IMG/VR virus record: IMGVR_UViG_3300009545_000018 | Coordinates: 310,001 to 374,000 of that record | Length of the DNA stretch: 64,000 bases | Direction: 5' to 3' (one strand) | In this document: positions 2,328 through 62,702 of the stretch, in pieces | How the letters are laid out: every line of letters starts with the position of its first letter | How positions within the stretch are numbered: the stretch's first letter is position 1 | The notes under the pieces: generated by a model | The model's database searches: none | What the model was told of the DNA's origin: nothing | Seen by the model: the letters and a program-made list of their open reading frames with translations, nothing else | Position numbers and translations under genes: made by a program

Positions 2328-3329
2328 ATGAAGAAAAATAAACTATTATCCATTTTGACACCTGAACAACTAATTGAAGAATTTAAAAATTTAGGAACCG
2401 TTCCTAAAATCGCTAAAAAATATAATATTAATACTCAAACAGTTTATACTGCTTTCAAGTTAATAAATTATGATTGTAAAGTTAGGCAAGATGTCGCTTC
2501 TCTTGTTAGTAAAGAAATTTTACAAGAATCTTACAATAGATTAAAATCTTTAAAAGCAGTGGGGCGTGAATTAAATATTACATCTGATAGTATCAAAGAC
2601 TACATGGATAAGTTTGGATTAGAATATAAAAAACAAGTAATCTATAATTGTAATCATAGTTTTTTCTCTTCGCAAACAGAAGAATCATTTTATGTGGCTG
2701 GATTTTTAGCGGCTGATGGATGTGTTAAAAATAGAAAAAGTCCAAGTCAAAAATATGGTTCTACTCGGCATGAAGTATATATTGGCTTATCAAAAAATGA
2801 CAAAGAACATTTGTTAAAAATAAAAAAACTGATTGCGGCGGAAACTCCAATTAGAGATTATTTGGTAAAGAATTCTAAAAGAAATCCTAATTGGAATGAT
2901 AGTTGGAAAAGTGAGATTTCAATAACATCTAAAGAAATGTTTGATGACCTAGCAAAATTTAACATAGTCCCACGTAAAAGTCTCATTTATACTATGCCTG
3001 ATTGGATGAAAGATCATCCTTTAAAACATCATTTTCTTAGAGGATATCATGATGGTGATGGTAGCGTTTATAAATCATTAAGTAAAGGAAAAATAGTAGA
3101 ACAATTATGTTTTTCTTTAAGAGGAACACAAGAATTTCTATTAATAGTGCGCGATATACTAGAGAAGGAGTGTGACTTAGATCATCGAAACACTCCAATT
3201 AGAATCTCTAGTGGACATGGTGTTTTAGAATATGGAGGCAATGGAATTGTAAAGAAGATTTGTGATTATCTCTATAGAGATGCTAGTGTTTATTTAGAAA
3301 GAAAATTTAATATTGTAAATGAAGTATGA
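2328..3329 (+). CDS. Free-standing LAGLIDADG homing endonuclease with N-terminal HTH repeats
   Basis: Two LAGLIDADG helices (FYVAGFLAADGCV, HFLRGYHDGDGSV) and C-terminal IYLERK-like motif (VYLERK). Confidence 0.92.
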   Translation: MKKNKLLSILTPEQLIEEFKNLGTVPKIAKKYNINTQTVYTAFKLINYDCKVRQDVASLVSKEILQESYNRLKSLKAVGRELNITSDSIKDYMDKFGLEYKKQVIYNCNHSFFSSQTEESFYVAGFLAADGCVKNRKSPSQKYGSTRHEVYIGLSKNDKEHLLKIKKLIAAETPIRDYLVKNSKRNPNWNDSWKSEISITSKEMFDDLAKFNIVPRKSLIYTMPDWMKDHPLKHHFLRGYHDGDGSVYKSLSKGKIVEQLCFSLRGTQEFLLIVRDILEKECDLDHRNTPIRISSGHGVLEYGGNGIVKKICDYLYRDASVYLERKFNIVNEV

Positions 3330-4041
3330 TGCTATAATTGATAAATATAAAAAATGTTTACTATGTAATAAGAAAACAAAATTTAGTTTTAGAATAAAAG
3401 GATATTCTAAAAATAATACTTATCGTGGAAGTATAAGATATGATTCTGTAAATGATAATTTAAAATACTTACAACTAAGTCCAGAACACAATAAAAAATA
3501 TAAATTAGTAAAAAAATTACTAAATTTGCATATTTTCAATCCTACCGATTATTATAATAATAAAATTTCTGAGAAAAATTTTCACATTGAACAATATAAA
3601 CTATTTATACATTGTCCAACGCATTCACATATAAAAAATGTAAACTACTATCCAGTTTATAATGAAAGTCATTTTTATGTAAATTTAGATGCGCAAACAT
3701 ATGATGGTGTATTTGAATATGAAAGCAAAGAAATAAATTATGTTTTTGTTGATAAAACAGCCGGTCCATATCCATGGATTAAATACGATTATGAGAATGA
3801 ATTATTAACTATGAATAATGATTATAGTTTGTGGGGTAAAATAAATATTAAATTAGAAGATGGTTACTTTAATACTTTAAATGTTAAAACTATAATGAAA
3901 GATCTTATAAAAATTGAGAAAATTGATAATTCAAATTATGCCGCTTCAGAAGAAGGAAGGGAGGCTATATTCAAATATATAATTGGACAATATAATTATA
4001 AAAATCTTAAATCAGCTTTTAAGCTAAAAATATTCAAATAA
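3319..4041 (+). CDS. Hypothetical protein with C-terminal KLKxF tail (ends FKLKIFK)
   Basis: 240 aa ORF, N-terminal CxxC; C-terminus matches the motif of the adjacent minus-strand array. Confidence 0.6.
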   Translation: MKYDAIIDKYKKCLLCNKKTKFSFRIKGYSKNNTYRGSIRYDSVNDNLKYLQLSPEHNKKYKLVKKLLNLHIFNPTDYYNNKISEKNFHIEQYKLFIHCPTHSHIKNVNYYPVYNESHFYVNLDAQTYDGVFEYESKEINYVFVDKTAGPYPWIKYDYENELLTMNNDYSLWGKINIKLEDGYFNTLNVKTIMKDLIKIEKIDNSNYAASEEGREAIFKYIIGQYNYKNLKSAFKLKIFK

Positions 4042-4372
4042 ACAATTTCAATTTACAAAGTTTTTCTACCTTACTTGGATTGTCTTTTATCCAATCGACA
4101 ATTTTATCTAAAGCCACATTATCCACCAGTTTAAGATCATCTTCATTATAATAGAAAATTAAGCATTCATTATACATTGCGGTATCTGTTTCAAAATCAA
4201 AATAATAATACGTACAATAAATAGGTAATGAGTGAACTGTATTTAAATTTGACTGAATATGCTTATTGTCATCTATTACTAATTTTAATTTTAAAATTAA
4301 GTCTATTATAGAATAAACTCTAAGGTCTGTTGAAATAATAAGTTTTGATCTTGTAGGAATAATATTACTCAT
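4034..4372 (-). CDS. Hypothetical protein, KLKxF-tail array 1 (ends WIKDNPSKVEKLCKLKLFI)
   Basis: Coupled by ATGA overlap to the upstream array gene; shared C-terminal motif. Confidence 0.7.
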   Translation of the reverse strand: MSNIIPTRSKLIISTDLRVYSIIDLILKLKLVIDDNKHIQSNLNTVHSLPIYCTYYYFDFETDTAMYNECLIFYYNEDDLKLVDNVALDKIVDWIKDNPSKVEKLCKLKLFI

Positions 4373-4638
4373 ATAAATGATTTTAAATTTAAATATCTTT
4401 GAATTTCTTTTTCTAGTTCTGAGTTTTTTGTTTTATGATTAAGCCAAGCCAAAAATTCTTTATAGCCATCATAAGGGAAATGATCTTCAATTTCATTAAT
4501 ATAATTGATAGGTATAATCCACATTTCATATTTATTTGAATAGATAAATTCTTTATGATTCATAGCATATACTGTTGAATTATGAGTTAAAGTATTATTT
4601 CTAATATCAGATAATATCTGAGCTAATTTAAAATTCAT
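4369..4638 (-). CDS. Hypothetical protein, KLKxF-tail array 1 (ends RYLNLKSFI)
   Basis: Start directly abuts the upstream stop; shared C-terminal motif. Confidence 0.7.
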   Translation of the reverse strand: MNFKLAQILSDIRNNTLTHNSTVYAMNHKEFIYSNKYEMWIIPINYINEIEDHFPYDGYKEFLAWLNHKTKNSELEKEIQRYLNLKSFI

Positions 4639-4980
4639 TTAACAAAATACCTTTAATTTCATTATTCTTTCAAATTCATAAAAATTTTCTTTTATCCAAA
4701 TTGTTAAATCATATGCTGCCCAAGAATCAAATGGTTTTAAATAAGGAATATCTTCGGCACGTTTTTCTTCAAAAGCAATAATTTTGTTATTTATTTTATA
4801 AAGAAAAACACCTGTAAGTTCTTTGTCATGAATAAAATAAAATTCATTAATTAGATAATCTGAAAGATTTCCGGTATTTAATTCTTTTTTTAAGAAGAAG
4901 AAAAATTCTGAAATTTTTTCCAATAATAAAACATCTTTAATAACTTTTTCTTTATTTGTTTCAACAATTATTGTTTTCAT
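4639..4980 (-). CDS. Hypothetical protein, KLKxF-tail array 1 (ends WIKENFYEFERIMKLKVFC)
   Basis: ATGA overlap; shared C-terminal motif. Confidence 0.7.
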   Translation of the reverse strand: MKTIIVETNKEKVIKDVLLLEKISEFFFFLKKELNTGNLSDYLINEFYFIHDKELTGVFLYKINNKIIAFEEKRAEDIPYLKPFDSWAAYDLTIWIKENFYEFERIMKLKVFC

Positions 4981-5267
4981 AAAAATGCTTTTAATTTATT
5001 TGTGGAATCTATTTCTTTTGAATGTAGTTTAATCCAATTAATTAAATTTTCTGCCGAAAAAGATATTTCAAAATGATTTGGCATATGATTTGGATCACAA
5101 AATGGATCTAAATGATAAATAATTTTGGAATCAAAACATTTATATCTAAATAAATGTTTCTTGCGATATTTTGGATAAAAAGAGATATGGTAATTATTAT
5201 CAATATCTGATTTTATATCATTAATAAATACCCATAAATCTTTATAGTATTTGGTTTGGTATTTCAT
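4977..5267 (-). CDS. Hypothetical protein, KLKxF-tail array 1 (ends WIKLHSKEIDSTNKLKAFL)
   Basis: ATGA overlap; shared C-terminal motif. Confidence 0.7.
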   Translation of the reverse strand: MKYQTKYYKDLWVFINDIKSDIDNNYHISFYPKYRKKHLFRYKCFDSKIIYHLDPFCDPNHMPNHFEISFSAENLINWIKLHSKEIDSTNKLKAFL

Positions 5268-5557
5268 GTAAAGGCTTTTAATTTTTCAAATCTTGACAAG
5301 GTATCATGGTTATTTTTGACATATAAGTCTAATTCAATAACATCATCTAACGAAATTATTGGTAATTTAGGAAGATTAAAATTAGTAATTCTGGCAACTA
5401 TATAAAAGCCTGCAGCATCCACATACCTTACTGATGCCGCGTCTGGATTATGAGATACCGCGCTCCAATAGCAATTGACTGAAATATTATGATCTAGTCT
5501 TTCTTTTATTTGAAGTAAAAGACTTAATGTATCAGTAATTATATCTTCTTTATACAT
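5264..5557 (-). CDS. Hypothetical protein, KLKxF-tail array 1 (ends RFEKLKAFT)
   Basis: First gene of the array, 6 nt after the 2H-ParB gene; shared C-terminal motif. Confidence 0.7.
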   Translation of the reverse strand: MYKEDIITDTLSLLLQIKERLDHNISVNCYWSAVSHNPDAASVRYVDAAGFYIVARITNFNLPKLPIISLDDVIELDLYVKNNHDTLSRFEKLKAFT

Positions 5558-5563
5558 AAAATA

Positions 5564-6592
5564 TTATCGATCTTTTTGTCGACGCTCATGAGTTGGTGTT
5601 AAGTAACCATCAGGATCGATAAATGCTAATTTATAAAACATATTAATTTTATCAAATAATGATAATTTTGTTTGATGTGGAGGGGTTTTAACCCAATCAT
5701 TTACTAATGCAGGCACATGAGTATAACCTAATTCTTTAGAAGCTGCTATACGATGAATTCCGTCTATAATGACGAATTTGCCGCCACCATCACGATGTGC
5801 AATTCTTATAGGATCTAGTGTTACTCCATCTTTCATTTTTTGTAACACTACATCATATTTTTCTTTACTCCAAATAGGCTTATCTTCAATGACAGAAATA
5901 GGTATTATATCAAAATAGTATAATCCCCATCCACCATATTGATTATATTCTTCTTGAAGAGCATCATCATCACCATTAAACATTTCTAAAAATCTTTTAA
6001 CAGCCAAATCATCATATTTATAGTGACTTACTTGAGCGGTTTTATAGTAGGATTCAATTTTTGATATTAATTCAGCACGTTTTTCTGGTTTTTTTAATTG
6101 AAAATTGACGAATAAACGACTATCACCATAATCGCCGCCCCATAAAACTATATCTTGAACAGTAAATGTTATGGGATCTATCTTAAATTTTTTAAATTTT
6201 TCTAGCTCTTTATCATAAGCTAGTGTAACATGTGGATTAAAATCTTTAAAATTTTTTTTATAATCAATTTTTTCTTCATCAAATTTTGCTTTGAGCTTAT
6301 CAGAAAGTTTATGAATATCATCACTTTCAACACGAGCAATAATAGGTAAAGGATTATCTTTATATTTAGGAAAGCTATCTACACAATTAATTGTAATAGT
6401 AAATGGCTCTTCTTTATTGACTACTTCATAAGTAGCTTCTAAAGCTTTAGAGACTTCAGTGATTGGCCAATTATCATCAAAACAAAGGATAGTAATATGG
6501 TATTCTGAAGGCGATTCTTTCACCCCAGGTACATCAATTTCCATTAACATTCTCCCCACCTCAGGGGCTATTCTGACACCAAGAAAAGCCAT
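5564..6592 (-). CDS. 2H phosphoesterase (2'-5' RNA ligase-like) fused to a ParB/sulfiredoxin-like domain
   Basis: Paired HxT motifs YHITI and PHVTL in the N-terminal half; IIDGIHRIAA (DGxHR) with upstream LDPIRI and downstream VPALV typical of ParB/Srx domains. Confidence 0.82.
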   Translation of the reverse strand: MAFLGVRIAPEVGRMLMEIDVPGVKESPSEYHITILCFDDNWPITEVSKALEATYEVVNKEEPFTITINCVDSFPKYKDNPLPIIARVESDDIHKLSDKLKAKFDEEKIDYKKNFKDFNPHVTLAYDKELEKFKKFKIDPITFTVQDIVLWGGDYGDSRLFVNFQLKKPEKRAELISKIESYYKTAQVSHYKYDDLAVKRFLEMFNGDDDALQEEYNQYGGWGLYYFDIIPISVIEDKPIWSKEKYDVVLQKMKDGVTLDPIRIAHRDGGGKFVIIDGIHRIAASKELGYTHVPALVNDWVKTPPHQTKLSLFDKINMFYKLAFIDPDGYLTPTHERRQKDR

Positions 6593-10632: not shown

Positions 10633-11376
10633 ATGAGTAATGTTACAAAAATTTTTTATGTTTATTGTTTCCAAAATAAAATAAATAATAAAATGTATAT
10701 TGGTAAAACATCTAATATAGAAAAAAGAAAAAAAGAACATGCTTTAGCAAATGGTGATTGTCCATTATTTCATAACGCTATAAAAAAATATGGAATTGAT
10801 AATTTTAATTTTTTAATTTTATCAGAGCATAATACAGAAAAAGAGGCTTTAGAGTTTGAAATTAAATATATAAAAGAATATAAAACAAATGTTGATAAAT
10901 TTGGTGATAAATTTGGTTACAATTTGACTGATGGTGGAGATGGTGTTTCTGGACATAAACATTTACCAGAAACTATAGATAAAATATCTAAGTCACTCAA
11001 AGGAAGACCAGGAACTAATAAAGGTAAAATATTTAGTGATGATGTTAAATTAAAATTATCTGAAAGTCACATGGGGCAAATAGGTTATTGGAAAGATAAA
11101 GAATTTTCAGAACAACATAAAAAAAACCTTTCTGATTCACATATGGGTCATCCTGGATTTTGGTTGAATAAAAAAAGATCTCCAGAAACTATAGAAAAAA
11201 TTAGAAAATCTAATTCTGGTAAAATAAAACCAAAAATTTTATCCGAGGATAGTATAAAAGAAATTATAAAACTATATAATAGTAATAATTATACTTATAA
11301 TCAACTGGCAATAAAATTTAATGTTGGAAAAACCACCATTTTTAGAATAGTCAAGAATGGAAACAAAAATGAGTAA
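10633..11376 (+). CDS. Free-standing GIY-YIG homing endonuclease with NUMOD3 repeats and C-terminal HTH
   Basis: FYVYCFQNKINNKMYIGKT, GYNLTDGGDG, repeated HLPETIDKIS / SPETIEKIR and LSESHMG / LSDSHMG motifs. Confidence 0.92.
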   Translation: MSNVTKIFYVYCFQNKINNKMYIGKTSNIEKRKKEHALANGDCPLFHNAIKKYGIDNFNFLILSEHNTEKEALEFEIKYIKEYKTNVDKFGDKFGYNLTDGGDGVSGHKHLPETIDKISKSLKGRPGTNKGKIFSDDVKLKLSESHMGQIGYWKDKEFSEQHKKNLSDSHMGHPGFWLNKKRSPETIEKIRKSNSGKIKPKILSEDSIKEIIKLYNSNNYTYNQLAIKFNVGKTTIFRIVKNGNKNE

Positions 11377-14300
11377 ATATCCAAATCAAATAGATTCAGA
11401 TGTTGAATTACCAGTTGTAAATGATAATATTACAGAAATTGGTGCTGAGGCAATTAATGCTTTAAGAGAAGCTGTATTTAATATTGAGCAAGAGGTAGGA
11501 TTAGGCGGATCAGGTAGTTCAGGTACAATTGCTGATAGATTAGGTGTATCTATCTTGCCTGATGGAACAATTAATCCATCAGCTATCATTTCTTTAGGTT
11601 TAGTTACTTTACCCATTACTAATAGTCAAATTTCAAATACAGCCGCTATTCCAGAGTCTAAATTATCACTAGATCATTCTACTGAAGATTTGTATAATAA
11701 TATTTTAAATATAAATACAAATCTTAGTGCTGCAACTGGTTGGATTTCTAGTACAGGTGTTAAACTAGAGCCACATTTAGCTGGAGCAATTTACCGTCAT
11801 ACTTTATTTCAAATTGATGTTACTACAAATCCTGCACAATATTTAAAAAATAAATTTGAAAGCTTGAGAGATAATACCAACTCTTATACATTAATTAATG
11901 ATATTAATAGTGAATTATTAACACATCAATTTAGTGATGGATCACCTATAGGTAATATACAAAATATTACTACATTTAATGGATCTATTTATCCTTCTAA
12001 TTATGGACATACAGCAAGTGGAATATTTTTAGATACAGATCGATTTTCTACTATTCCTCAAACCGCTCAAGATCTCCAAAGTTTTGCTCAATTTGTGGAT
12101 AGTTCTAGTATTTTCTTATATGGAACTAGAATTCAAAATCTATATACAAATGGTATCTCTAGAGCCTCTAGATCTTCTAGTTTAAGTACAGATGGATATG
12201 GTGTGCCTATTGTACCAATCACACCTGCTATTGCATATTTATTAAATACTGGAACAAGCAGTATACCATTTGATGATATTAATACTGGTGATGATATTAT
12301 TGAATTAAAACCTTCTGCAAGTGATTTAGCTAATAATTCTTTTGATGAAAAATTTTCTCTAGTTAAAATTGGTGATATTATTAGGGTTAATTATGGTTCA
12401 ATTGAAGTTGGATTTGTAGTAAAAGAGAAAAAGTATATTCAAAATGGTGGAAACAAAAAGTTTATAATTAGAATTGCTGGAAAAAATCTTTTATATACAA
12501 CCTCTGCTGTTGTTAGAATTGATAGACCATTATATAATAATAACAAATTTGGTGTTTTGACAATTGCTGCTGCAAATAATGAGTTTTCTGAAACACCAAG
12601 TTTAATTATTGGTTCTCCTACTGGAGCTATGGCTCTCGGAAATGGATTTAACCCAGATCAATTAGATTCGGCTCATTATTTACTATATTTAGCATTGTAT
12701 CCAACTGGTCATGCTGAAGATGGTTATGTAGTATTACCAGGAATTGATATTACAGGAAATGCGGGAACAACACCCGGACAATATACATTAGATTCAATTG
12801 TAGAATCTACAAATAATGTATTAAGAAAAGCCGGATATAATTATAGATTTATTTCTTATAGTTATCAGGGAAACTTTGGTATTATGTTAGCAGACTCCTA
12901 TAATAATACTGGATTTTCTATTATCAATGCAGTGGTAGATGGCAGTGGAAATTATGATCAAATTGAAACAAATATTAATTTTCCAAATAATATAGTAGAT
13001 GTATTTGTCAATGTAGATCCTTGCGGTTTTGGCGTAACTGGAGCTAATATAGCAAGTCCATTATATCAAAAAACATATGCATCTCCCGAATCAGCCATTA
13101 TTGCTACCAAACTATTTCTTCCATTAAGAAGAAATAACTTTTATGTAAATGGTGGAGAAAAAGACAAATTAAGTTTAGATATTGGACAAACATTAGATGG
13201 TTATGGTGATGGTTATTGGTTTGCTAGTATTGTAGATCAAAATATTTATCCTGGACCAATACCCGTAGGTAGAGTGCAAACTACTTATAGAGTAATGTTA
13301 GATTTATCAACTAGTGGATTAAAATCCGGTAAAACTTTAGTAGTTCAAGGATTTAATGATTCTACAGTTACCAATTATGGTAGATTTATAATCCAAGATG
13401 TTAATTTCGGTTGCTATCCAAATGTTTATACCGATATTACAGTATTTGACGCTGTACATGCGGCTGGATTTTCTCCTACAAGTACCTTACCTTTAGGTTC
13501 TACGGTTGGATTATATTTTAATTATGATTCAGTTTCTTTTAACTCTGAAAGCGCGACCGATTCAGCTAGTGTAACACCTTTTAAACGATTATTTGAAGTA
13601 TATGTAGATTTAGAGGGAAAAACTTTTACACATGAACGTGCTAGAATAAATGCAAGCCCTTCTAATTTAATTATAAATGGGTCTGTTCCATTATATGGAT
13701 CATCAGAGTTAAGTAAATTAGAAATTATTGATGTTTCTCCTAAATTACGAGGATATCAGTTTGGTTCTGTAACAAAAATAACATTACAGGTATTTAGTTA
13801 TGATGCAATAACTGGATTATTTAGCGGTAGATTATCTTCTTATGATGGTGTTACTCATACTAAGTTAGGACCAATTTCTTATGGTAAACGTGGAGAAATT
13901 GTAAGATTTTATGATGAAACCAATATTGATTATGTAGATTTAATGTTTGATATAAACACTATTGTATTTAATTTTACTAATCAATTATTGGATGTACAAT
14001 TATTTCCAACATTATCTTTTGATGAAGAAATAATGTTGATAGCAAGTTGTCAATTAAATGATTTTACAAATTCTGTTTCTAAAATTAAAGATAGGCGTCA
14101 ATTTGGAAATACTTCTGAAAAAGATTTAAGCACCTCAGCTCTTAATTATATTTCTGCCCCAGAAAGACTATTACACATTAATGGTGTAATAAAGGGTTTT
14201 TCATTAGATTCTACAGTTACTAATCCAAATAATGGACAATTATTTATTAGTGGTGGCATCGCTTTAGTTAATGGCAATTTTATAGATGTTAATCCGCAAA

Positions 14301-16714
14301 CAGTTAACATTCCAATTATTAAAGAAATTAGTGGAATTTTATATGATATAAATTGGGCAATTTGTGTTAATGAAAAAGGTGAAATTCAAAATATTCCACT
14401 TTTGGATTATGATGCTGATTTACCAACACCTACTAATGAATCTAGATTATTTAATGCTTATAATGTTAATAGTGGCTCAACTTATGTTCTTGACTCCAGT
14501 ACTTTTATTAATTTAGTAACTAATAGAAAAGATTTAGTTATACTTTATGTTGTTACTTCAACTGTTACTACACCTAGTGTTAGTATAACATTGAATGTAA
14601 AAGATGCTAGAAAATTTGTTTATAATGAATCAGAAAATATCTCTTTAACATGGGTACCTGGGGACCAAGGAGATAAAGATGTGTCTGGTCATTTCCAAAG
14701 TTTTGAAGCCGTATTATCTTGGATAAATAAATTTGGAAATAGAAATAATTTTATAAAAGTTAAGGGAAATTTTGATCTTGATTCATTAATTGATATGACT
14801 CAATTAAAATTACCGGTAACATTTATAGGTGATGCCGCCACTTTTAATGTAAATTCTAATATTGGATTTTATGTTAAAAAAGATGTGACTTTTGACAATA
14901 TTACATTTAATTATACGCCATCTGGATTTACGAATACAGGAAATATTAATAGTGATAATGGATGTATTTTTAGTCGTACATATGAGGTTGGGGGAGCTGT
15001 AAGTAATATTACTATTAAAAATTGCGTCTTTAATAGTGGAGTAAATAATCATCCTCCATTTATATCATTTAGAGTAGCCTCTAATGAATATGTTGACTTA
15101 GTTAATATCATAGGAAATAAATTTAATGATTCATTATCAGTTAATGATGCAGCTATTGCATTTGTAGGAACAGAAACAAATTATTTTATAGCTAATCCAT
15201 CACTTATTTCTAACATTGTAGTTGCAAATAATTATTGTGCACAAAATCAAGTGTTTTATTTTGCAAATTATTATTCTCCTTCAGGTAATAGCTTTTCTAT
15301 TCCAGGTTTAACTGCAGTCAATGTTCAAATTTATAATAATAAAGCCGGCTATATTGCTTATAATGTATCTGGAAATAATAATTTTAATACAGATATAGAG
15401 GGTCAACAATTATTTTCTATTGAAAGAAATGATTTAATAGCTGTTGTTGGTCCAGTAGATGAGACAGGTAAAACCCCCGCCATTGTGGGTGCAACAGCTA
15501 ATGGATTACCTAGTGGAAATGTAGTAATTTCAGATAACAATTTGAATTTTATTACATGTGATGCTTGTGGCGGATATCCAGAATATGATGGATATGTTGG
15601 AAGTTTAGTAATTGATAATAATAGATTATATGGACATAATTATACAAGCAAAATATATAATATATTTAATATTACTACATATACATCCGAATTATTTGCA
15701 TTAACAGATAAAAATATTGCAATTTCTGTCTATACTAGAACTTATAATCCATACAATGAATCTTCTATTTCAGTTATTGTTAAAAATAACAATATTCAAG
15801 GTAGCAAGATTGATGGAACATATTATGGATATGCTGGAGGCATTAGCATAACCGGGTCTGCATTAGTTGCTGGTAATACTATTAGAGGATTAGTTACAAC
15901 TTCTATTAGTGGTGTGGCACAAGGATTTGGTATATTCTTACAAAAAATTTATGGTCAAAGTTTATTTAGTAAAGTTCATCATAATTCTATTTATCGTAAA
16001 TCAGAAGAGTTATTTGCTTATGTAAGATTGTTTGGTGTAGATGCAGATATAACAGATAATTTTTTTGATAGTTCTTATGTAGATATTGCTCATACCAATG
16101 AAGTAGTAGTTAATATAGAATCTGATACTGGAATTTCTGTTGTTGATAGAAATAAAAATCAAATAACCACGACTATTATTAATGGTATGGACTGGCAAAT
16201 GCAAACTAATGGATATGATTTAGGTTCAGCTGCCACAGGATCAATAATTGGTCCTGTTGGTAATGTTATCATAGCCAGAAAACATAATAGAGATCCTTAT
16301 GATTCTGTTTTAACTCAATTTGATTCATCTTTTTCTTTTAACTCCGGCTCTGTTTCTAATTTTGGTTATTTTGCATATTTATCTTTAAAAGATTATTTGC
16401 CAAAAGGGGTTACTATAATAAGTGGATCTGTTAATGTAGTTTGTGATACTTCTAGCGGTTCAAATGCTATTGATTTAACATTTGCTAGAAAAAAGACACA
16501 TAGCGGATCATATGAAACATATACTGATACACAATCTTTTAGTGGTGGTTATGTTGCTGATACTATAGAAACATTAACTGTTAATTTAAATGCTTATAAT
16601 TGGATGATGGATCCAAATGAATTATTTAATAATGTATTTATTGCGTGGGGAGGAACAGCTACTTCAGCAGCCACAGTATCGGTAGATTGTTTAATATTAA
16701 AATATAAATGGTAA
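11369..16714 (+). CDS. Very large virion structural protein with C-terminal parallel beta-helix-like region
   Basis: About 1780 aa; start moved to MSKYP, right after the GIY-YIG overlap; N-terminal YPNQID...INALREAVFNIE module; C-terminal repeats (ITIKNCVFN, VNIIGNKF, IVVANNY, LVIDNNRL) typical of right-handed beta-helices. Confidence 0.6.
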   Translation: MSKYPNQIDSDVELPVVNDNITEIGAEAINALREAVFNIEQEVGLGGSGSSGTIADRLGVSILPDGTINPSAIISLGLVTLPITNSQISNTAAIPESKLSLDHSTEDLYNNILNINTNLSAATGWISSTGVKLEPHLAGAIYRHTLFQIDVTTNPAQYLKNKFESLRDNTNSYTLINDINSELLTHQFSDGSPIGNIQNITTFNGSIYPSNYGHTASGIFLDTDRFSTIPQTAQDLQSFAQFVDSSSIFLYGTRIQNLYTNGISRASRSSSLSTDGYGVPIVPITPAIAYLLNTGTSSIPFDDINTGDDIIELKPSASDLANNSFDEKFSLVKIGDIIRVNYGSIEVGFVVKEKKYIQNGGNKKFIIRIAGKNLLYTTSAVVRIDRPLYNNNKFGVLTIAAANNEFSETPSLIIGSPTGAMALGNGFNPDQLDSAHYLLYLALYPTGHAEDGYVVLPGIDITGNAGTTPGQYTLDSIVESTNNVLRKAGYNYRFISYSYQGNFGIMLADSYNNTGFSIINAVVDGSGNYDQIETNINFPNNIVDVFVNVDPCGFGVTGANIASPLYQKTYASPESAIIATKLFLPLRRNNFYVNGGEKDKLSLDIGQTLDGYGDGYWFASIVDQNIYPGPIPVGRVQTTYRVMLDLSTSGLKSGKTLVVQGFNDSTVTNYGRFIIQDVNFGCYPNVYTDITVFDAVHAAGFSPTSTLPLGSTVGLYFNYDSVSFNSESATDSASVTPFKRLFEVYVDLEGKTFTHERARINASPSNLIINGSVPLYGSSELSKLEIIDVSPKLRGYQFGSVTKITLQVFSYDAITGLFSGRLSSYDGVTHTKLGPISYGKRGEIVRFYDETNIDYVDLMFDINTIVFNFTNQLLDVQLFPTLSFDEEIMLIASCQLNDFTNSVSKIKDRRQFGNTSEKDLSTSALNYISAPERLLHINGVIKGFSLDSTVTNPNNGQLFISGGIALVNGNFIDVNPQTVNIPIIKEISGILYDINWAICVNEKGEIQNIPLLDYDADLPTPTNESRLFNAYNVNSGSTYVLDSSTFINLVTNRKDLVILYVVTSTVTTPSVSITLNVKDARKFVYNESENISLTWVPGDQGDKDVSGHFQSFEAVLSWINKFGNRNNFIKVKGNFDLDSLIDMTQLKLPVTFIGDAATFNVNSNIGFYVKKDVTFDNITFNYTPSGFTNTGNINSDNGCIFSRTYEVGGAVSNITIKNCVFNSGVNNHPPFISFRVASNEYVDLVNIIGNKFNDSLSVNDAAIAFVGTETNYFIANPSLISNIVVANNYCAQNQVFYFANYYSPSGNSFSIPGLTAVNVQIYNNKAGYIAYNVSGNNNFNTDIEGQQLFSIERNDLIAVVGPVDETGKTPAIVGATANGLPSGNVVISDNNLNFITCDACGGYPEYDGYVGSLVIDNNRLYGHNYTSKIYNIFNITTYTSELFALTDKNIAISVYTRTYNPYNESSISVIVKNNNIQGSKIDGTYYGYAGGISITGSALVAGNTIRGLVTTSISGVAQGFGIFLQKIYGQSLFSKVHHNSIYRKSEELFAYVRLFGVDADITDNFFDSSYVDIAHTNEVVVNIESDTGISVVDRNKNQITTTIINGMDWQMQTNGYDLGSAATGSIIGPVGNVIIARKHNRDPYDSVLTQFDSSFSFNSGSVSNFGYFAYLSLKDYLPKGVTIISGSVNVVCDTSSGSNAIDLTFARKKTHSGSYETYTDTQSFSGGYVADTIETLTVNLNAYNWMMDPNELFNNVFIAWGGTATSAATVSVDCLILKYKW

Positions 16715-26634: not shown

Positions 26635-27378
26635 ATGATTGAAAAAACGTGTAAGAAATGCGGAGAAACGAAGGACATTTTGTGCTTTTCAAAAAATCAA
26701 AGAGTTTGTAAAGACTGTAATAAAAGATATCGTGAAATCCACAAAAAAGAAATAAAAGAGTATAAGGATGTTTATTATTTGGAAAATAAAAATATCATTT
26801 TAGAAAAAAGTGCACTTTATTATGAAGAAAATAAAGATTATATTTTAGAAATTAACAAAATCTATTATGAACAAAATAAAGAAACAATATTAGATAGGGC
26901 AAAGGAATATTATTTTGAAAATAAAGAAAGTATAAAAGAATATCAAAAAAAATATAATGTTGAAAACAAAGAAGAAATAAATTTATATAAATCTAACTGG
27001 AGTAAAGATAAATGGGAAAATGATCCTATTTTTAAATTAAGAAGAACAGTTTCTAAAGAGGTGTGGACTGCATTAAAGAAAAATAAAAACAATTTATCAA
27101 TTCTAGAATATTTAACGTATTCAATGAAAGAATTAAAACAGCATTTGGAGTCTTTATTTGAGCCTTGGATGAATTGGAATAATTGGGGAGTTTATAATCC
27201 TAAAACTTGGGATGACAATAATAGTTTAACTTGGACGTGGAATATAGATCATATTATTCCTCAAAGTAAACTACCATATAGTTCTATGGAAGATGATAAT
27301 TTTAGAAAGATTTGGTCGCTTGATAACTTACGACCATTATCTGCTAAAGAAAATATAATTGAAGGAAATAGAAGGTAA
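26635..27378 (+). CDS. Free-standing HNH homing endonuclease
   Basis: N-terminal CxxC...CxxC, repeated YYxxNKExI helices, WNIDHIIPQS...LDNLRPLSAKEN HNH core. Confidence 0.88.
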   Translation: MIEKTCKKCGETKDILCFSKNQRVCKDCNKRYREIHKKEIKEYKDVYYLENKNIILEKSALYYEENKDYILEINKIYYEQNKETILDRAKEYYFENKESIKEYQKKYNVENKEEINLYKSNWSKDKWENDPIFKLRRTVSKEVWTALKKNKNNLSILEYLTYSMKELKQHLESLFEPWMNWNNWGVYNPKTWDDNNSLTWTWNIDHIIPQSKLPYSSMEDDNFRKIWSLDNLRPLSAKENIIEGNRR

Positions 27379-27379
27379 T

Positions 27380-50407: not shown

Positions 50408-50414
50408 GATAAAT

Positions 50415-54152: not shown

Positions 54153-54170
54153 TTAATTTTATATTTGGGG

Positions 54171-54198
54171 TTGACATTAACAGACTTGGTGTTACTAT
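54171..54198 (+). promoter_or_regulatory. Sigma70-type promoter
   Basis: TTGACA (54171-54176), 16-nt spacer, TGn-TACTAT extended -10 (54190-54198), 8 nt before the ATG at 54207. Confidence 0.6.
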
Positions 54199-54206
54199 CG
54201 TAAATA

Positions 54207-55701: not shown

Positions 55702-55714
55702 TATAGTATCATCT

Positions 55715-56854: not shown

Positions 56855-57576
56855 TGTTGTCTATAGTAATACCAGTGTTTAATAAATGGAACTTTACTGA
56901 AGCTTGTTTAAATGATTTGCGCAGTCTTCCGCATAATACACATGAAATTATTGTTGTAGATAACAATAGTACAGATGAAACTCAGCATAAATTATTAAAT
57001 TTATTTTGTACTGAATATGAAGAGATTCGATATCATAAAAACCCTGAGAACTTAGGTTTTGCCAAGGCTTGTAATATAGGTTATTCATTGTCCAAACACC
57101 CTAATGTTATGTTCTTAAATAATGATATAAGAGTTAAATCTAATAAAAATAATTGGACAGACAAGATAATTGAGAAATGTAGTGAGGGATTAGTAGGACC
57201 TACTATGGGACAATTAGACTCTCAATTAAAATTTATTAAAGAATCTAATTGTGTATTACCTGGCAATTCTTATTTATCAGGCTGGTGTATTGCTGGTTCT
57301 AAAGAAACATGGAATAAGTTAGAAATTCCAAGAAAAGCAACTCAACAATTTTCTAATGCCAATGTACCGCAAATATTCTCAGAAGAATATGGCTTAGCAT
57401 ATTTTGAAGATACGGATTTAGGATTTCGTGCACGAAAATTAGGAATTAAAACAAATGTAGTTGATATACCGGTTATACATTTTGGCAAACAAAGTAGTTC
57501 CCAGATTAATACTTATGCACTTTATTCTTATGCAAGATCTATTTTTGTAAAGAAATGGACAAATAAAGTGCCCTAA
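56854..57576 (+). CDS. Glycosyltransferase family 2
   Basis: LSIVIPVFN, IIVVDNNSTD, NLGFAKACNIG, FLNND, YFEDTDLGFR. Confidence 0.92.
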   Translation: MLSIVIPVFNKWNFTEACLNDLRSLPHNTHEIIVVDNNSTDETQHKLLNLFCTEYEEIRYHKNPENLGFAKACNIGYSLSKHPNVMFLNNDIRVKSNKNNWTDKIIEKCSEGLVGPTMGQLDSQLKFIKESNCVLPGNSYLSGWCIAGSKETWNKLEIPRKATQQFSNANVPQIFSEEYGLAYFEDTDLGFRARKLGIKTNVVDIPVIHFGKQSSSQINTYALYSYARSIFVKKWTNKVP

Positions 57577-57914
57577 TGGAAATTGTTTTTAATGCTGTAA
57601 CGTATAATTTAACAAATTGGAAATTTTCTTATGAGGGTAGCGGTGGACAACCAATTCCAACATCTGTTAGTCGTTCTGTAATAGATCTAAAAAATCCATA
57701 TCCAGTATTAAAAGATGAGATTGGATTTTTTATACCTTTAACTAGTCCTGATATTATTTATCAAGTTTATGGGCAAGGATCTTTAACAGATTTTGCAATG
57801 ATATATAGTCGTGCCTTTAATAATATTTCTTATAAGCAAAAAGATCTTAATAAAGCTATGATTCATTTAGATGATTTTTTATTAAAATTAACAAAATTTA
57901 GTTGTTATTTATAG
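57576..57914 (+). CDS. Hypothetical protein, KLKxF-tail array 2 (ends DDFLLKLTKFSCYL)
   Basis: TAATG coupling; N-terminal YNLTNW motif shared across the array. Confidence 0.7.
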   Translation: MEIVFNAVTYNLTNWKFSYEGSGGQPIPTSVSRSVIDLKNPYPVLKDEIGFFIPLTSPDIIYQVYGQGSLTDFAMIYSRAFNNISYKQKDLNKAMIHLDDFLLKLTKFSCYL

Positions 57915-57918
57915 AACG

Positions 57919-58257
57919 ATGAAATTAAAATTTAATAAACAAGAATTTGTACTTTCACACTGGAAAGTGATGAATAACTGTTATTGTAGAGTTTTATATG
58001 TCCCATCCTCTTGTTGTGATTTTATTATAAAACATCGGTCTGTTGGAGCGACTAATTTTTATATAAATAATCATTATATTTATATATCTGGATTAGATAT
58101 TTTAACAATTAGCGGCGAAGGTTATTTGTCAAAAATAGCATATCAGTTTAATAATATTTATAAAGATCGTAAATACAAAATAAAAGAATTAGAAATAGCC
58201 AAAATGGATGTTACTAATTTTATTTTAAAGTATACAAAACTATATTCATTTACATGA
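57919..58257 (+). CDS. Hypothetical protein, KLKxF-tail array 2 (ends NFILKYTKLYSFT)
   Basis: N-terminal FVLSHW motif; shared C-terminal helix. Confidence 0.7.
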   Translation: MKLKFNKQEFVLSHWKVMNNCYCRVLYVPSSCCDFIIKHRSVGATNFYINNHYIYISGLDILTISGEGYLSKIAYQFNNIYKDRKYKIKELEIAKMDVTNFILKYTKLYSFT

Positions 58258-58604
58258 TATTAACGGTAAAAACCAATAATCATACTTTTGTTTTCTCTAA
58301 ATGGATGAAATTCAGAACAAAACATGATTTTAAAAACTCTTATCCAGATTATATTAGATTGAGCGATGATTTTCCTTACTGGGATGTTGAAATAGGATTT
58401 AAATTAATTAGTTCAGAAATAGAGTGGCAACACAACCAGAGTACTGGCATTTGGGAAGCATTCTCTACTCCAGAATTTTACCATGTAATAAAGATTTATA
58501 AAAATCTTTATGGCAGTAAGGTATCATATGATGATATCGAAGCTGCTAAATCAAAAATGGATGAGTTATTAATTAAATATGATAAATTGGGGTGTTTTTT
58601 ATGA
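58254..58604 (+). CDS. Hypothetical protein, KLKxF-tail array 2 (ends DELLIKYDKLGCFL)
   Basis: ATGA overlap; N-terminal FVFSKW motif. Confidence 0.7.
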   Translation: MILTVKTNNHTFVFSKWMKFRTKHDFKNSYPDYIRLSDDFPYWDVEIGFKLISSEIEWQHNQSTGIWEAFSTPEFYHVIKIYKNLYGSKVSYDDIEAAKSKMDELLIKYDKLGCFL

Positions 58605-58918
58605 TTTTTTATTATAAAGAAAAAGAATATTGTTTAACAGATTGGACAATATCTCATCAAGGTTACCATTATTGGCGCAGGTTAGTTATGTCTGATGGAA
58701 AACCCTCCACTTATGATTTTATTGGTTATAGAATTTGGAAAGATAAAGAATATACTTTAGCATCTAGTGGTTTATTTGTAGAAATTCATAAGTTATATAT
58801 TATGTATGATAATACTGCTGGAAAACCTGTAAGAATTGATGATAACACCTTATATCCTTTTAAAGAAAAATTAGATGATTTCTTATTACGAGTTAATAAA
58901 CTAAAGGTGTTTATATGA
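58601..58918 (+). CDS. Hypothetical protein, KLKxF-tail array 2 (ends DDFLLRVNKLKVFI)
   Basis: Start taken at the ATGA overlap; N-terminal YCLTDW motif. Confidence 0.7.
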   Translation: MIFYYKEKEYCLTDWTISHQGYHYWRRLVMSDGKPSTYDFIGYRIWKDKEYTLASSGLFVEIHKLYIMYDNTAGKPVRIDDNTLYPFKEKLDDFLLRVNKLKVFI

Positions 58919-59220
58919 GTATAATCATTGCAAATATAACAATTGGTGATTGGGAAGGCTTTGGTTCAGATGGTTATATTTGGAATTTTTGGAGATTCTC
59001 TTCTGGTAGTTTAGGAATTGGTTTATTAGTTGATAATTCAGATTGGTTTAAATTACAGCCCAATACCGCTACTTGGTCATTGATTTTTCATTCACCATTA
59101 TATTTTTTACAAGATCACTTTAAAGATATTGACTTCGTGAAATATTCAGAATTAGAGTTAACAAAAAAAGAAATAGATTTAAGGCTTGATAAAATTTCAA
59201 AACTTAAAAGTTTTTTATGA
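58915..59220 (+). CDS. Hypothetical protein, KLKxF-tail array 2 (ends RLDKISKLKSFL)
   Basis: ATGA overlap; N-terminal ITIGDW motif. Confidence 0.7.
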   Translation: MSIIIANITIGDWEGFGSDGYIWNFWRFSSGSLGIGLLVDNSDWFKLQPNTATWSLIFHSPLYFLQDHFKDIDFVKYSELELTKKEIDLRLDKISKLKSFL

Positions 59221-59313: not shown

Positions 59314-60033
59314 TTAATCTTTAAATTTGAATACATGATTTTCACAATATAACTTATATATATTATGTTTTCTGTCTAAATAAATATTTGCATCTTTATA
59401 AAGCCATTCACAAAAACGTTTGACTTGGCGACTTCCTCCAAAACACAATTTATATGTATTGTTTTTATATCTTTCTGGGTGATATATTTGCCCCCTAATA
59501 TTTAAATTTGATAAAATATTGTTTATTGAAATACACATTTCTTGTGTTGAAGCAAATTCAATATTTAATTGATCTTGATGTATATAGATACTCCCATCAC
59601 CATCAAAATATCCTCTAATAAAATGTTGAATCAAATGATTATCAATCCATTCTGGAAATGTAATATTAAAACTTTTAGCGCCATGACGCCCCTTTTTTAT
59701 TAATGATGTAGACAAATATCTACTGTTTAATTCAAGTCTATATGCAACGTATTTACCTTTATTTTTTAGTTGTTTAAATGGCGGGCGTGGTTTGCCAAAA
59801 AAATTTGCACATTTAACTAAATGATTTTGATCCATTTCTTGTAATTCTATAATAATTTGTCCGGTTTTTTCCTTATTATAAGCATCTGCATAAAAGAAAC
59901 CCAACCAATATGCTTTTTCTTCACAATTAATTTCGTCCATTAAATTTTCTGTTATAATATATTTTCTCACTATAGGATATAAAATTATGCCCAAGATACC
60001 TGAAGTTAAAATAAATTTTGTAGGAGGTCCCAT
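59314..60033 (-). CDS. Free-standing LAGLIDADG homing endonuclease (true start probably the GTG at 59970 or nearby)
   Basis: EEKAYWLGFFYADAY and HFIRGYFDGDGSI motifs, IYLDRK tail; oriented opposite to its neighbours. Confidence 0.9.
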   Translation of the reverse strand: MGPPTKFILTSGILGIILYPIVRKYIITENLMDEINCEEKAYWLGFFYADAYNKEKTGQIIIELQEMDQNHLVKCANFFGKPRPPFKQLKNKGKYVAYRLELNSRYLSTSLIKKGRHGAKSFNITFPEWIDNHLIQHFIRGYFDGDGSIYIHQDQLNIEFASTQEMCISINNILSNLNIRGQIYHPERYKNNTYKLCFGGSRQVKRFCEWLYKDANIYLDRKHNIYKLYCENHVFKFKD

Positions 60034-62699: not shown

Positions 62700-62702
62700 A
62701 AT

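What the first reader, a model, noticed from the sequence alone, without database searches (positions are those of the whole stretch)
3319..5557. Array 1 of orphan proteins sharing a C-terminal K-L-K-x-F-hydrophobic tail
Six otherwise dissimilar ORFs end in the same motif: KLKIFK, KLKLFI, NLKSFI, KLKVFC, KLKAFL, KLKAFT. Five are translationally coupled on the minus strand and one converges from the plus strand. Most also carry W-I-K-x-N about 12-15 residues before the motif. The same tail ends five more genes about 52 kb away. A shared terminal amphipathic helix (h-x-x-L-x-x-F-h-COOH) on variable N-terminal cargo suggests a docking or addressing system I do not recognise from any described family. 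Candidate roles (inference) are a packaging or ejection tag, a membrane-targeting helix, a sliding-clamp-type L-x-x-F-h peptide, or a C-terminal degron that sets effector lifetime. This is the best candidate here for a new system.
Basis: partly seen in the sequence, partly recalled or inferred. Interest (0 to 1): 0.82.

Follow-up and report, generated by a model that had tools for sequence, protein, structure and literature searches.

The report
Shared C-terminal tail on phage proteins
Dozens of small, otherwise unrelated proteins of an uncultivated 448-kb soil phage all end in the same eleven-residue tail (…KLKxF + one residue), which is real, selected at the protein level and undescribed, and most likely serves as a common docking handle, although its partner is still unknown.

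Summary
Six ORFs at 3319-5557 end [KN]LKxF plus one residue. Eight of 52 window genes do so, against 0.004 expected from composition. Synonymous codons vary, so selection acts on the protein.

The five minus-strand genes are not "otherwise dissimilar". They are full-length paralogues of a new, unannotated family. A profile search of 1.84 billion proteins found 22 representatives, all ending in the tail. The AF2 model (pLDDT 86) is beta-alpha-beta-beta-beta plus C-terminal helices.

The same tail ends at least 25 genes of this genome, on bodies that share nothing else: families A, B, C, D, a zinc-ribbon family, a repeat family, and orphan A0. With the last 14 residues removed, profile-profile comparison finds no similarity. 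Most repeat-family homologues elsewhere carry other C-termini.

Arrays sit in fast-turnover islands. The array 1 site holds 2, 5, 7 or 8 copies in relatives, always behind a 2H phosphoesterase gene.

Best reading (about 0.38): a modular docking handle that plugs Leu-4 and Phe-1 into a shared partner. No candidate role could be tested, and a purely structural helix remains a serious rival.

The parts
5564..6592 (-). 2H phosphoesterase (LigT/Acb1-like, residues 32-152) fused to a ParB_N-like domain. It is the first gene of the minus-strand operon, 6 nt upstream of the first tail-bearing gene. It is the conserved upstream neighbour of A-family genes in relatives.
   Evidence: Pfam hits 2_5_RNA_ligase2 at 1.5e-11 and LigT_PEase at 6.4e-10; ParB_N at 0.0026. 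Synteny in L002, L006, L007 and L023.
5264..5557 (-). A5, an A-family paralogue of 97 aa ending KLKAFT.
   Evidence: HMM 92.6 bits. AF2 pLDDT 86, pTM 0.79, topology beta-alpha-beta-beta-beta plus helices 70-74, 76-82 and 84-96. Orthologues are 42-53% identical.
4977..5267 (-). A4, an A-family paralogue of 96 aa with WIKLH, ending KLKAFL. ATGA overlap with A5.
   Evidence: 98 bits.
4639..4980 (-). A3, an A-family paralogue of 113 aa with WIKEN, ending KLKVFC.
   Evidence: 66 bits.
4369..4638 (-). A2, an A-family paralogue of 89 aa with WLNHK, ending NLKSFI.
   Evidence: 38 bits. Orthologue at L007 2435-2710.
4034..4372 (-). A1, an A-family paralogue of 112 aa with WIKDN, ending KLKLFI. It is the last gene of the array and has no co-oriented downstream gene.
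   Evidence: 84 bits.
3319..4041 (+). A0, a 240-aa orphan ending KLKIFK. Its body is unrelated to the A family. It converges on A1 with an 8-nt overlap, and its start overlaps the stop of the homing endonuclease gene.
   Evidence: No hit to the A-family HMM. No relatives found.
2328..3329 (+). LAGLIDADG homing endonuclease that abuts array 1. It is absent from the relative L002 at this site.
   Evidence: Pfam LAGLIDADG_3 at 1.2e-09.
57576..57914 (+). B1, a B-family gene of 112 aa with the degenerate tail TKFSCYL.
57919..58257 (+). B2, a B-family gene of 112 aa with tail TKLYSFT.
58254..58604 (+). B3, a B-family gene of 116 aa with tail DKLGCFL.
58601..58918 (+). B4, a B-family gene of 105 aa from the ATG in the ATGA overlap (ORF listing gives a GTG start at 58592). 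Tail NKLKVFI.
   Evidence: the database holds the 105-aa form. AF2 is low confidence: five strands plus helix 81-104.
58915..59220 (+). B5, a B-family gene of 101 aa with tail SKLKSFL. It is the last gene of the array and is followed by a convergent endonuclease gene.
59314..60033 (-). Second LAGLIDADG homing endonuclease, abutting array 2. The B array, this gene and the Fpg gene are all missing from relatives L004 and L005.
   Evidence: Pfam LAGLIDADG_3 at 4.8e-12.

Best explanation
The KLKxF tail is the end of a short, autonomous C-terminal interaction module. The module is about 11 residues: h-[ED]-[KR]-h-x-K-L-K-[ASV]-F-h-COOH. In the A family, and in some members of the repeat family, a WIKxN helix precedes it.

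This phage lineage has recombined the module onto many unrelated small protein bodies. The bodies are the variable, specificity-giving parts, probably binders or inhibitors used in host takeover or counter-defence. They diversify in tandem arrays inside fast-turnover accessory islands.

The tail acts as a common docking handle. The invariant Leu at -4 and Phe at -1, together with the nearby free carboxylate, plug into a hydrophobic pocket on one shared partner. The conserved Lys/Arg at -8, -5 and -3 supply electrostatic steering.

Shown:
- The motif exists and is statistically extreme.
- Selection acts at the protein level.
- The register relative to the C-terminus is fixed.
- The motif occurs on at least six bodies that are not detectably related.
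- It is separable from its body.
- Array copy number turns over between relatives.
- The A family has its own fold.

Inferred:
- The tail binds a partner at all.
- The identity of that partner. Candidates are the capsid interior or scaffold for co-packaging and injection, a sliding clamp, or a protease/unfoldase.
- The bodies are anti-host effectors.
For: Chance and DNA-level causes are excluded.
- 8 of 52 genes carry the motif against 0.004 expected.
- Leu at -4 is encoded by TTA, TTG, CTA, CTT and CTG, with Met, Ile and Val as replacements. Lys is AAA or AAG and Phe is TTT or TTC. These frequencies are no more uniform than genome codon usage.
- A relative with GC 0.40 writes the tail as AAA CTC AAA GCC TTC TTA.
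- Genes at the ends of arrays, with no downstream gene, also carry the tail.

The tail is modular.
- Profile-profile comparisons among families A, B, C, D and Z align only the last 11-29 columns, in register with the C-terminus. Probability falls to 0.3% or less once 14 residues are trimmed.
- The A-family HMM gives 38-98 bits on A1-A6 and at most 9 bits, tail only, on everything else.
- Of 65 homologues of the HRxDGPAxE-repeat body, about 9-13 end in an EEFERLIKLKAFW-type tail. The rest have unrelated ends.

The register is fixed. An aromatic residue sits at the penultimate position in 39 of 39 collected tails and in all 22 A-family representatives.

The pattern does not look like a plain amphipathic alpha-helix. 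Hydrophobic periodicity of the last 11-14 residues peaks at 120-125 degrees (moment 1.3), against 0.57 at 100 degrees.

The tail is abundant. At least 25 tail-bearing genes were found in about 100 kb of sampled genome.

The arrays turn over.
- The site behind the phosphoesterase gene holds 2, 5, 7 or 8 A-family genes in four relatives, with changed order.
- The B array is absent from relatives L004 and L005.

There is a precedent for the logic. [quoted passage not shown]
Against: - No partner was identified and no binding was tested.
- In the confident AF2 model of A5 (pTM 0.79) residues 84-96 form a helix inside a compact fold, with pLDDT 95 for residues 81-90 and 76 for 91-97. Leu-4 and Phe-1 may therefore simply be core residues.
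- In L025, more than 16 repeat-family paralogues keep the tail as an ordinary family feature.
- Within A5 orthologues the body is at least as conserved as the tail.
- The fixed end could reflect gene compaction (ATGA coupling) rather than recognition of the carboxylate.
- No transcript or protein evidence exists.
Confidence: 0.38

Rival explanations
1. The tail is a structural helix only. It is the last core helix that closes small beta-sheet domains. It persists because it nucleates folding and was carried along by duplication and by recombination at array junctions. It addresses nothing.
For: - AF2 places the helix at 84-96 inside a compact A5 fold with pTM 0.79.
- A1-A5 are full-length paralogues.
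- A, B and the repeat family all look like a beta-sheet followed by a C-terminal helix.
- A hydrophobic arc wider than 180 degrees fits a helix lying in a curved sheet.
- The L025 paralogues keep the tail as a family trait.
Against: - The same K-L-K-x-F-x ending occurs on bodies with no detectable homology, including zinc-ribbon-like and repeat bodies.
- Conserved Lys/Arg at -8, -5 and -3, which would be surface residues, are not explained by packing.
- Homologous repeat bodies fold with quite different C-termini.
- The aromatic residue is at the penultimate position in 39 of 39 tails.
Confidence: 0.25
2. The tail is an oligomerisation handle. The C-terminal helix, or the WIKxN-plus-tail hairpin, pairs with the same element of another copy or another paralogue, building homo- or hetero-oligomers such as four-helix bundles.
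For: - A two-helix C-terminal unit is predicted at residues 70-82 and 84-96.
- Many co-expressed, translationally coupled paralogues carry an identical handle.
- A single beta-alpha-beta-beta-beta module normally pairs with a second one in the VOC fold, which it weakly resembles.
Against: - There is no heptad pattern. Lys occupies the position expected for a core residue (-3), and periodicity is 3.0 rather than 3.5.
- A fixed distance to the C-terminus is not required for helix pairing.
Confidence: 0.15
3. The tail is a membrane-targeting amphipathic helix of the MinD/FtsA type. It would hold small effectors at the inner face of the cytoplasmic membrane.
For: The tail is C-terminal, Lys-rich and carries Leu/Phe, with a net charge of about +2.3 over the last ten residues. 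This resembles MinD/FtsA tails by general knowledge.
Against: - The hydrophobic moment at the alpha-helical angle is less than half that at 120 degrees. Lys-8 and Lys-3 fall within the hydrophobic arc of an ideal alpha-helix.
- The end position is strict, which membrane anchors do not need.
- AF2 packs the helix on the domain.
Confidence: 0.08
4. The tail is a C-terminal degron. The non-polar end ([ASV]-F-[LI]-COOH) with upstream basic residues is read by a host or phage AAA+ protease, so that these proteins are short-lived.
For: The last three residues are non-polar in most tails. It is established knowledge that non-polar C-termini (the ssrA LAA type) and basic-hydrophobic ends (the MuA type) are ClpX signals.
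Against: - The strongest constraints are at -1, -4 and -5, not on the last three residues as a set. The final residue can be K, T, S or W.
- There is no experimental handle, and the host is unknown.
Confidence: 0.08
5. The motif is a DNA- or translation-level signal. The conserved 3' sequence would serve translational coupling or initiation of the next gene, or act as a recombination junction between cassettes. The peptide would be a by-product.
For: Most array genes overlap the next start by ATGA. No Shine-Dalgarno sequences are present.
Against: - Synonymous sites in the tail are as variable as, or more variable than, genome background.
- Replacements are conservative at the amino-acid level (L/M/I/V, K/R).
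- Codons are GC-richer in L023.
- The tail is present on A0, A1 and B5, which have no co-oriented downstream gene.
Confidence: 0.02

Closest known systems
T4 capsid-targeting sequence (CTS) of the T-even internal proteins
   Same: Polymorphic loci of small, mutually unrelated phage proteins share only a short conserved terminal peptide. The variable bodies are counter-defence proteins (PMC3012670). Here too, unrelated small bodies in hypervariable arrays share only a terminal peptide.
   Different: The CTS is N-terminal and is removed by the prohead protease. This tail is C-terminal, with a fixed distance to the free carboxylate, and no cleavage motif was recognised. Packaging was not tested. 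Tail-bearing genes also lie in the replication module, not only next to the structural module.
PIP-box and other clamp-binding peptides (Q-x-x-h-x-x-a-a; bacterial QL[SD]LF)
   Same: The spacing is the same: Leu at -4, Phe at -1, a hydrophobic last residue, and flanking basic residues. The location is often the extreme C-terminus. The 3-residue hydrophobic periodicity recalls the 3-10 turn of PIP peptides. This comparison rests on general knowledge.
   Different: There is no Gln at the defining position (-7 is L/I/Y/V; -5 is K). The last residue is aromatic in only 2 of 39 tails. No clamp gene was seen in the sampled part of the genome. More than 25 clamp clients in one phage would be unprecedented.
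HbYX motif of proteasome activators, and HslU C-terminal tails
   Same: The pattern hydrophobic, aromatic, any residue lies at the very C-terminus, with an obligatory register relative to the carboxylate. Such tails dock into pockets of a ring-shaped partner (general knowledge).
   Different: The aromatic residue is Phe, not Tyr (Tyr in 1 of the window's 11 tails). The motif extends upstream to -10. The host and any ring partner are unknown.
MinD/FtsA membrane-targeting sequences
   Same: Short, basic, Leu/Phe-containing helices at the C-terminus.
   Different: Alpha-helical amphipathicity is poor. The end register is strict. The helix is predicted to be part of the fold.
VOC/glyoxalase beta-alpha-beta-beta-beta module (body of the A family only)
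   Same: The order of secondary-structure elements at residues 4-57 matches. The best Foldseek hits are glyoxalase/bleomycin-resistance proteins and integron-cassette proteins over about 58 residues.
   Different: E-values are only 0.04 and TM-scores 0.32-0.38. There is a single module with three extra helices and no sequence signal. Metal ligands were not examined.

Membership tests
PIP-box (PCNA-interacting peptide) | Gln at position 1, three residues before the aliphatic position | tested here: not met
   Position -7 is L10, I10, Y6, V3, T2, A2, F1 among 39 tails, with no Gln.
PIP-box (PCNA-interacting peptide) | Aliphatic residue at position 4 and two aromatic residues at positions 7 and 8 | tested here: inconclusive
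   L/M at -4 in 37 of 39 tails and F at -1 in 39 of 39. The last residue is aromatic in only 2 of 39.
PIP-box (PCNA-interacting peptide) | Binds the hydrophobic pocket of a sliding clamp | not testable with these tools
   No multimer prediction was available, and no clamp gene was found in the sampled loci.
Bacterial beta-clamp motif QL[SD]LF | Q-L-x-L-F pentapeptide | tested here: not met
   The aligned positions read K-L-K-[ASV]-F. Gln is replaced by Lys, and the second Leu by a small residue.
T4-type capsid-targeting sequence | N-terminal peptide removed by the prohead protease after an L/I-x-E site | tested here: not met
   The shared peptide is C-terminal. The N-termini of the families are unrelated.
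T4-type capsid-targeting sequence | Cargo is found inside the virion | not testable with these tools
   The phage is uncultivated and no proteome exists.
HbYX C-terminal docking motif | Hydrophobic-Tyr-X at the extreme C-terminus | tested here: inconclusive
   The penultimate residue is always aromatic, but it is Phe. Tyr occurs only in B1. Position -2 is A/S/V/I/L.
MinD/FtsA-type membrane-targeting helix | Strong alpha-helical amphipathicity of the terminal segment | tested here: not met
   The moment is 0.57 at 100 degrees against 1.3 at 120-125 degrees for the mean profile of 22 tails.
PDZ-type C-terminal ligand | Specificity residues at positions 0 and -2 | tested here: not met
   The invariant positions are -1, -4 and -5. 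Position 0 varies among L, I, T, S, W, K and C.
VOC/glyoxalase superfamily (A-family body) | Paired beta-alpha-beta-beta-beta modules with significant structural or sequence match | tested here: inconclusive
   Foldseek best E-value is 0.04 and TM-score 0.32-0.38 over about 58 residues. There is no Pfam or PDB sequence hit. Only a single module is present.
Any curated family (Pfam, PHROGs, NCBIfam, PADLOC) | Score above the curated cut-off or a significant E-value | tested here: not met
   Searches gave nothing above threshold for A0-A5, B1-B5 or the 32-member alignment.

The most novel reading that the evidence does not exclude
A phage-encoded C-terminal address code. The h-E-K-h-x-K-L-K-x-F-h-COOH tail would be a C-terminal counterpart of the T4 capsid-targeting sequence, or a HbYX/PIP-like plug. 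It would route several dozen rapidly diversifying small effectors of a 448-kb phage to a single hub. One possible hub is the capsid interior, so that the effectors are co-injected with the DNA as a pre-made counter-defence arsenal.
Probability: 0.15. Interest if true: 0.85.

Novelty: new variant of a known kind. Interest (0 to 1): 0.58.

Why it matters
If the tail is a docking or addressing handle, it would give a one-line sequence rule for finding the accessory effector repertoire of a whole clade of uncultivated giant phages. It would also give a portable tag for sending proteins to whatever the hub is, whether capsid, replisome or protease.

The variable bodies, which turn over between close relatives and sit behind a 2H phosphoesterase gene, would then be a catalogue of candidate host-takeover or anti-defence binders.

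Even on the modest reading, the work defines three things:
- a new small-protein family with a confident fold;
- a new C-terminal motif;
- a clear case of one short module spread over unrelated bodies within a single phage genome.

Tried and rejected
- **Compositional artefact: rejected.** Expected 0.004, observed 8. Among the 166 six-frame ORFs of 40 aa or more, only these eight genic ORFs match the strict motif.
- **DNA-level or coupling signal: rejected.** Codons are diverse, a relative uses GC-richer codons, and the terminal genes of arrays keep the tail.
- **Known families.** Pfam, PHROGs, NCBIfam and PADLOC gave nothing. PDB sequence profiles of the family and of the 34-residue C-terminal module gave only noise.
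- **GenBank phages.** No match for the DNA, for A3 or for A0. The tail sheath matches only distantly.
- **Word-index protein search.** A3 and the B alignment found only themselves.
- **ESM Atlas.** Scores were 0.8 or below and the Atlas models are poor. The DUF7716/Imm8 lead was not confirmed by Pfam.
- **Foldseek on the A5 model.** Only weak VOC-like hits, plus Acb4 at TM about 0.3. BFVD gave nothing.
- **AF2 of the B family.** With 5 sequences pLDDT was 52, so the model was not searched.
- **Literature.** A search for the peptide strings found nothing relevant.
- **RNA runs.** None was listed.
- **Genome walk past the window end.** It returned a gene table without DNA, so no whole-genome census of the tail was possible.


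Full report
**Context**

The window is positions 310001-374000 of IMGVR_UViG_3300009545_000018, a 447,763-bp contig from a rhizosphere metagenome. GC content is about 29%.

It is a very divergent contractile-tailed jumbo phage. ORF 17681-20479 matches tail-sheath PHROGs and, distantly, the sheaths of Bacillus phage G and others. No GenBank phage is close.

Nearly all of 6.7-57.6 kb is one plus-strand block of very large genes that holds the tail sheath, so it is probably the structural module; it ends in FGE-sulfatase-like and glycosyltransferase genes.

**The observation**

All six ORFs exist at the stated coordinates with the stated endings.
- The minus-strand genes follow a 2H-phosphoesterase/ParB_N gene (5564-6592) after a 6-nt gap. 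They are linked by ATGA overlaps or by TAA directly followed by ATG.
- [KN]LKxF occurs exactly one residue from the C-terminus in 8 of 52 genes. Composition predicts 0.004. Only two internal copies occur in 20,669 residues, and among the 166 six-frame ORFs of 40 aa or more only these eight genic ORFs match the strict motif.
- The second array (57576-59220) has two strict tails and three degenerate tails that still fit K-[LF]-x-x-[FY]-x-COOH.

**Protein, not DNA**

- Across 39 collected tails, the Leu is written TTA, TTG, CTA, CTT or CTG, or is replaced by Met, Ile or Val. Lys is AAA or AAG and Phe is TTT or TTC. These proportions are no more uniform than genome-wide codon usage.
- A relative with GC 0.40 encodes KLKAFL as AAA CTC AAA GCC TTC TTA.
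- A0, A1 and B5 have no co-oriented downstream gene, so the tail is not merely a coupling signal.

**Array 1 is a real family**

The pairwise similarity of A1-A5 is weak. A profile of eight sequences, searched against 1.84 billion cluster representatives, found 22 proteins of 89-119 aa. Every one matched end to end, and every one ended [KNRSD]-[LIMV]-x-x-F plus one residue. The family has three landmarks:
- a conserved N-terminal helix (L-x-L-x-L-K-x-x-x-D);
- the WIKxN helix;
- the tail.

AlphaFold2 on A5 with only eight sequences gave pLDDT 86 and pTM 0.79. The elements are strand 4-7, helix 10-22, strands 27-34, 41-47 and 52-57, and helices 70-74, 76-82 and 84-96.

The first 58 residues weakly resemble one beta-alpha-beta-beta-beta module of VOC/glyoxalase proteins (best E 0.04, TM 0.32-0.38). 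BFVD, Pfam, PHROGs, NCBIfam, PADLOC and PDB sequences give nothing. So "otherwise dissimilar" is wrong for the five minus-strand genes.

**The same tail on unrelated bodies**

A0 (240 aa) and B1-B5 do not match the A-family HMM except at the tail. The B family is found only in this genome. Its low-confidence model is five strands followed by a long C-terminal helix, with no N-terminal helix.

A DNA-pattern scan and the flanks of fetched loci revealed more tail-bearing genes in the same contig.
- A sixth A member, two genes C1 and C2, and a repeat protein lie among the UvsW-like helicase, DnaC-like and DnaB genes just past the window end.
- Three zinc-ribbon-like genes (Z) and five D genes lie at contig 51.9-58.6 kb.
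- Two HRxDGPAxE-repeat genes lie at 411-421 kb.

That makes at least 25 tails in about 100 kb.

hhalign between families A, B, C, D and Z aligns only the last 11-29 columns, in register with the end. After the last 14 residues are removed, probabilities are 0.3% or less.

The repeat family gives a natural experiment. Of 65 homologues, about 9-13 end in an (S)QEEFERLIKLKAFW-type tail. The others have unrelated C-termini. Some of those others end with a WIKNNNI...LKFG module that recalls the A-family C-terminus.

The tail is therefore a separable module. It also occurs in other large AT-rich phages (L014, L016, L018, L024, L025). In L025, sixteen or more tandem repeat-family genes all end ...LIKLK[AV]LW.

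**Locus dynamics**

The site between the phosphoesterase gene and a conserved 299-aa gene varies between relatives.
- The window has 5 A-family genes.
- L002 has 2, in swapped order, plus one gene without the tail. It lacks the endonuclease, A0 and A1-A3.
- L007 has 7 tail-bearing genes.
- L006 has 8 tail-bearing genes.
- A distant relative with a shorter phosphoesterase still has one tail-bearing A-like gene right behind it.
- The B array, its endonuclease and the Fpg gene are absent from L004 and L005.

Within the A5 orthologue group (42-53% identity) the body is well conserved (C-x-W-S-A-T-S-x-N-P, L-P-x-I-S-x-D-D). Each paralogue therefore has its own maintained function.

**Anatomy of the motif**

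The consensus over 39 tails is:

| Position | Residues |
|---|---|
| -10 | hydrophobic |
| -9 | E/D |
| -8 | K/R (35/39) |
| -7 | hydrophobic |
| -5 | K (31) |
| -4 | L/M (37) |
| -3 | K (29) |
| -2 | A/S/V |
| -1 | F (39/39) |
| 0 | L/I/T/W and others |

- Net charge over the last ten residues is about +2.3.
- Hydrophobic periodicity of the last 11-14 residues peaks at 120-125 degrees (1.3) against 0.57 at 100 degrees. This is not the signature of a simple amphipathic alpha-helix or a heptad coiled coil. It fits either a helix buried over more than half its circumference or an h-x-x-h-x-x-a-a peptide of the PIP type.

**Mechanism**

I favour an autonomous docking handle (0.38).
- For it: modularity, the conserved surface charges and the invariant register to the carboxylate point to recognition by something outside the body.
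- Against it: the confident A5 model keeps the helix within the fold, so a purely structural role (0.25) is a serious rival.
- Other rivals: oligomerisation (0.15), membrane targeting (0.08), degron (0.08) and a DNA-level signal (0.02).
- Partner candidates cannot be ranked with the data. No clamp gene was seen in the sampled replication region. No virion data exist, and no RNA run was listed.

**Comparison with known systems**

- The closest logic is the T-even internal-protein system. There, diverse counter-defence proteins share only the capsid-targeting sequence (PMC3012670). That peptide is N-terminal and cleaved, so membership fails.
- PIP and beta-clamp motifs share the Leu-x-x-Phe-h spacing and the C-terminal position but lack the defining Gln.
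- HbYX shares the penultimate aromatic residue and the carboxylate register, but it uses Tyr.
- PDZ ligands and MinD-type helices do not fit the constrained positions.
- No paper mentions the peptide.

**Verdict**

The feature is real, statistically extreme and undescribed.
- Part of it is an ordinary story: a new, rapidly evolving paralogue family in an accessory island.
- Part of it is unusual: one short C-terminal module on many unrelated small proteins of one phage.
- Function remains inference.

Noticed in passing
window 5564-6592 (-): A 2H phosphoesterase (LigT/Acb1-like) is fused to a ParB_N-like domain. It lies directly upstream of A-family genes in every relative examined. More distant relatives (L021-L023) carry a 206-213-aa version without the ParB_N part. 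It could be a cyclic- or 2'-5'-oligonucleotide-degrading counter-defence enzyme.
   Followed up: partly
window 2328-3329 (+) and 59314-60033 (-): Two LAGLIDADG homing endonuclease genes abut the two arrays. Both are absent from the corresponding sites of relatives (L002; L004/L005). This suggests that endonuclease-driven insertion or rearrangement contributes to the turnover of the islands.
   Followed up: partly
window 60033-60869 (+): An Fpg/Nei-type DNA glycosylase (H2TH and Fapy_DNA_glyco domains) with a TTG start and the catalytic N-terminal Pro. It is absent from relatives L004 and L005.
   Followed up: partly
L003 17015-18373 (window-equivalent about 63868-65226, just past the window end): A TubZ-like tubulin gene (Tubulin 4.6e-15, TubZ-like_C 2.6e-09). 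It is followed by a UvsW-like helicase, a DnaC-like loader, DnaB, a sigma-like protein and ribonucleotide reductase. Whether this phage builds a compartment or a spindle is unknown.
   Followed up: partly
L010 (contig 51855-58610): 26-874 and 3060-4890: Two further tandem arrays in the same genome carry the same tail. One has three zinc-ribbon-like genes and the other five D-family genes.
   Followed up: partly
L025 374-12335: Another AT-rich phage contig (GC 0.33) carries sixteen or more tandem HRxDGPAxE-repeat genes that all end SSQEEFERLIKLK[AV]LW. This is a large lineage-specific expansion with Leu instead of Phe at the penultimate position.
   Followed up: partly
window-wide; starts of array genes: No Shine-Dalgarno-like sequence lies upstream of the array genes, and TAG is a rare stop (2 of 52). 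This hints at a host with Shine-Dalgarno-independent initiation (for example Bacteroidota). This is inference only.
   Followed up: no
L002 11080-12024 compared with window 4977-5557: The orthologues of A4 and A5 are in the opposite order in the relative L002. They are preceded there by a 110-aa gene without the tail.
   Followed up: no
window 54207-57576 and 61866-63665: An FGE-sulfatase-like protein, three glycosyltransferases and a nucleotide-sugar epimerase flank array 2 at the end of the structural module. They may be a virion- or DNA-glycosylation cluster.
   Followed up: no
window 11357-16714, 27359-32320, 39177-54152: There are five giant ORFs of 1245-2376 aa on the plus strand. The three searched neighbours of similar position had no PHROG match. 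They are presumably tail, baseplate or fibre proteins of a very divergent lineage.
   Followed up: no
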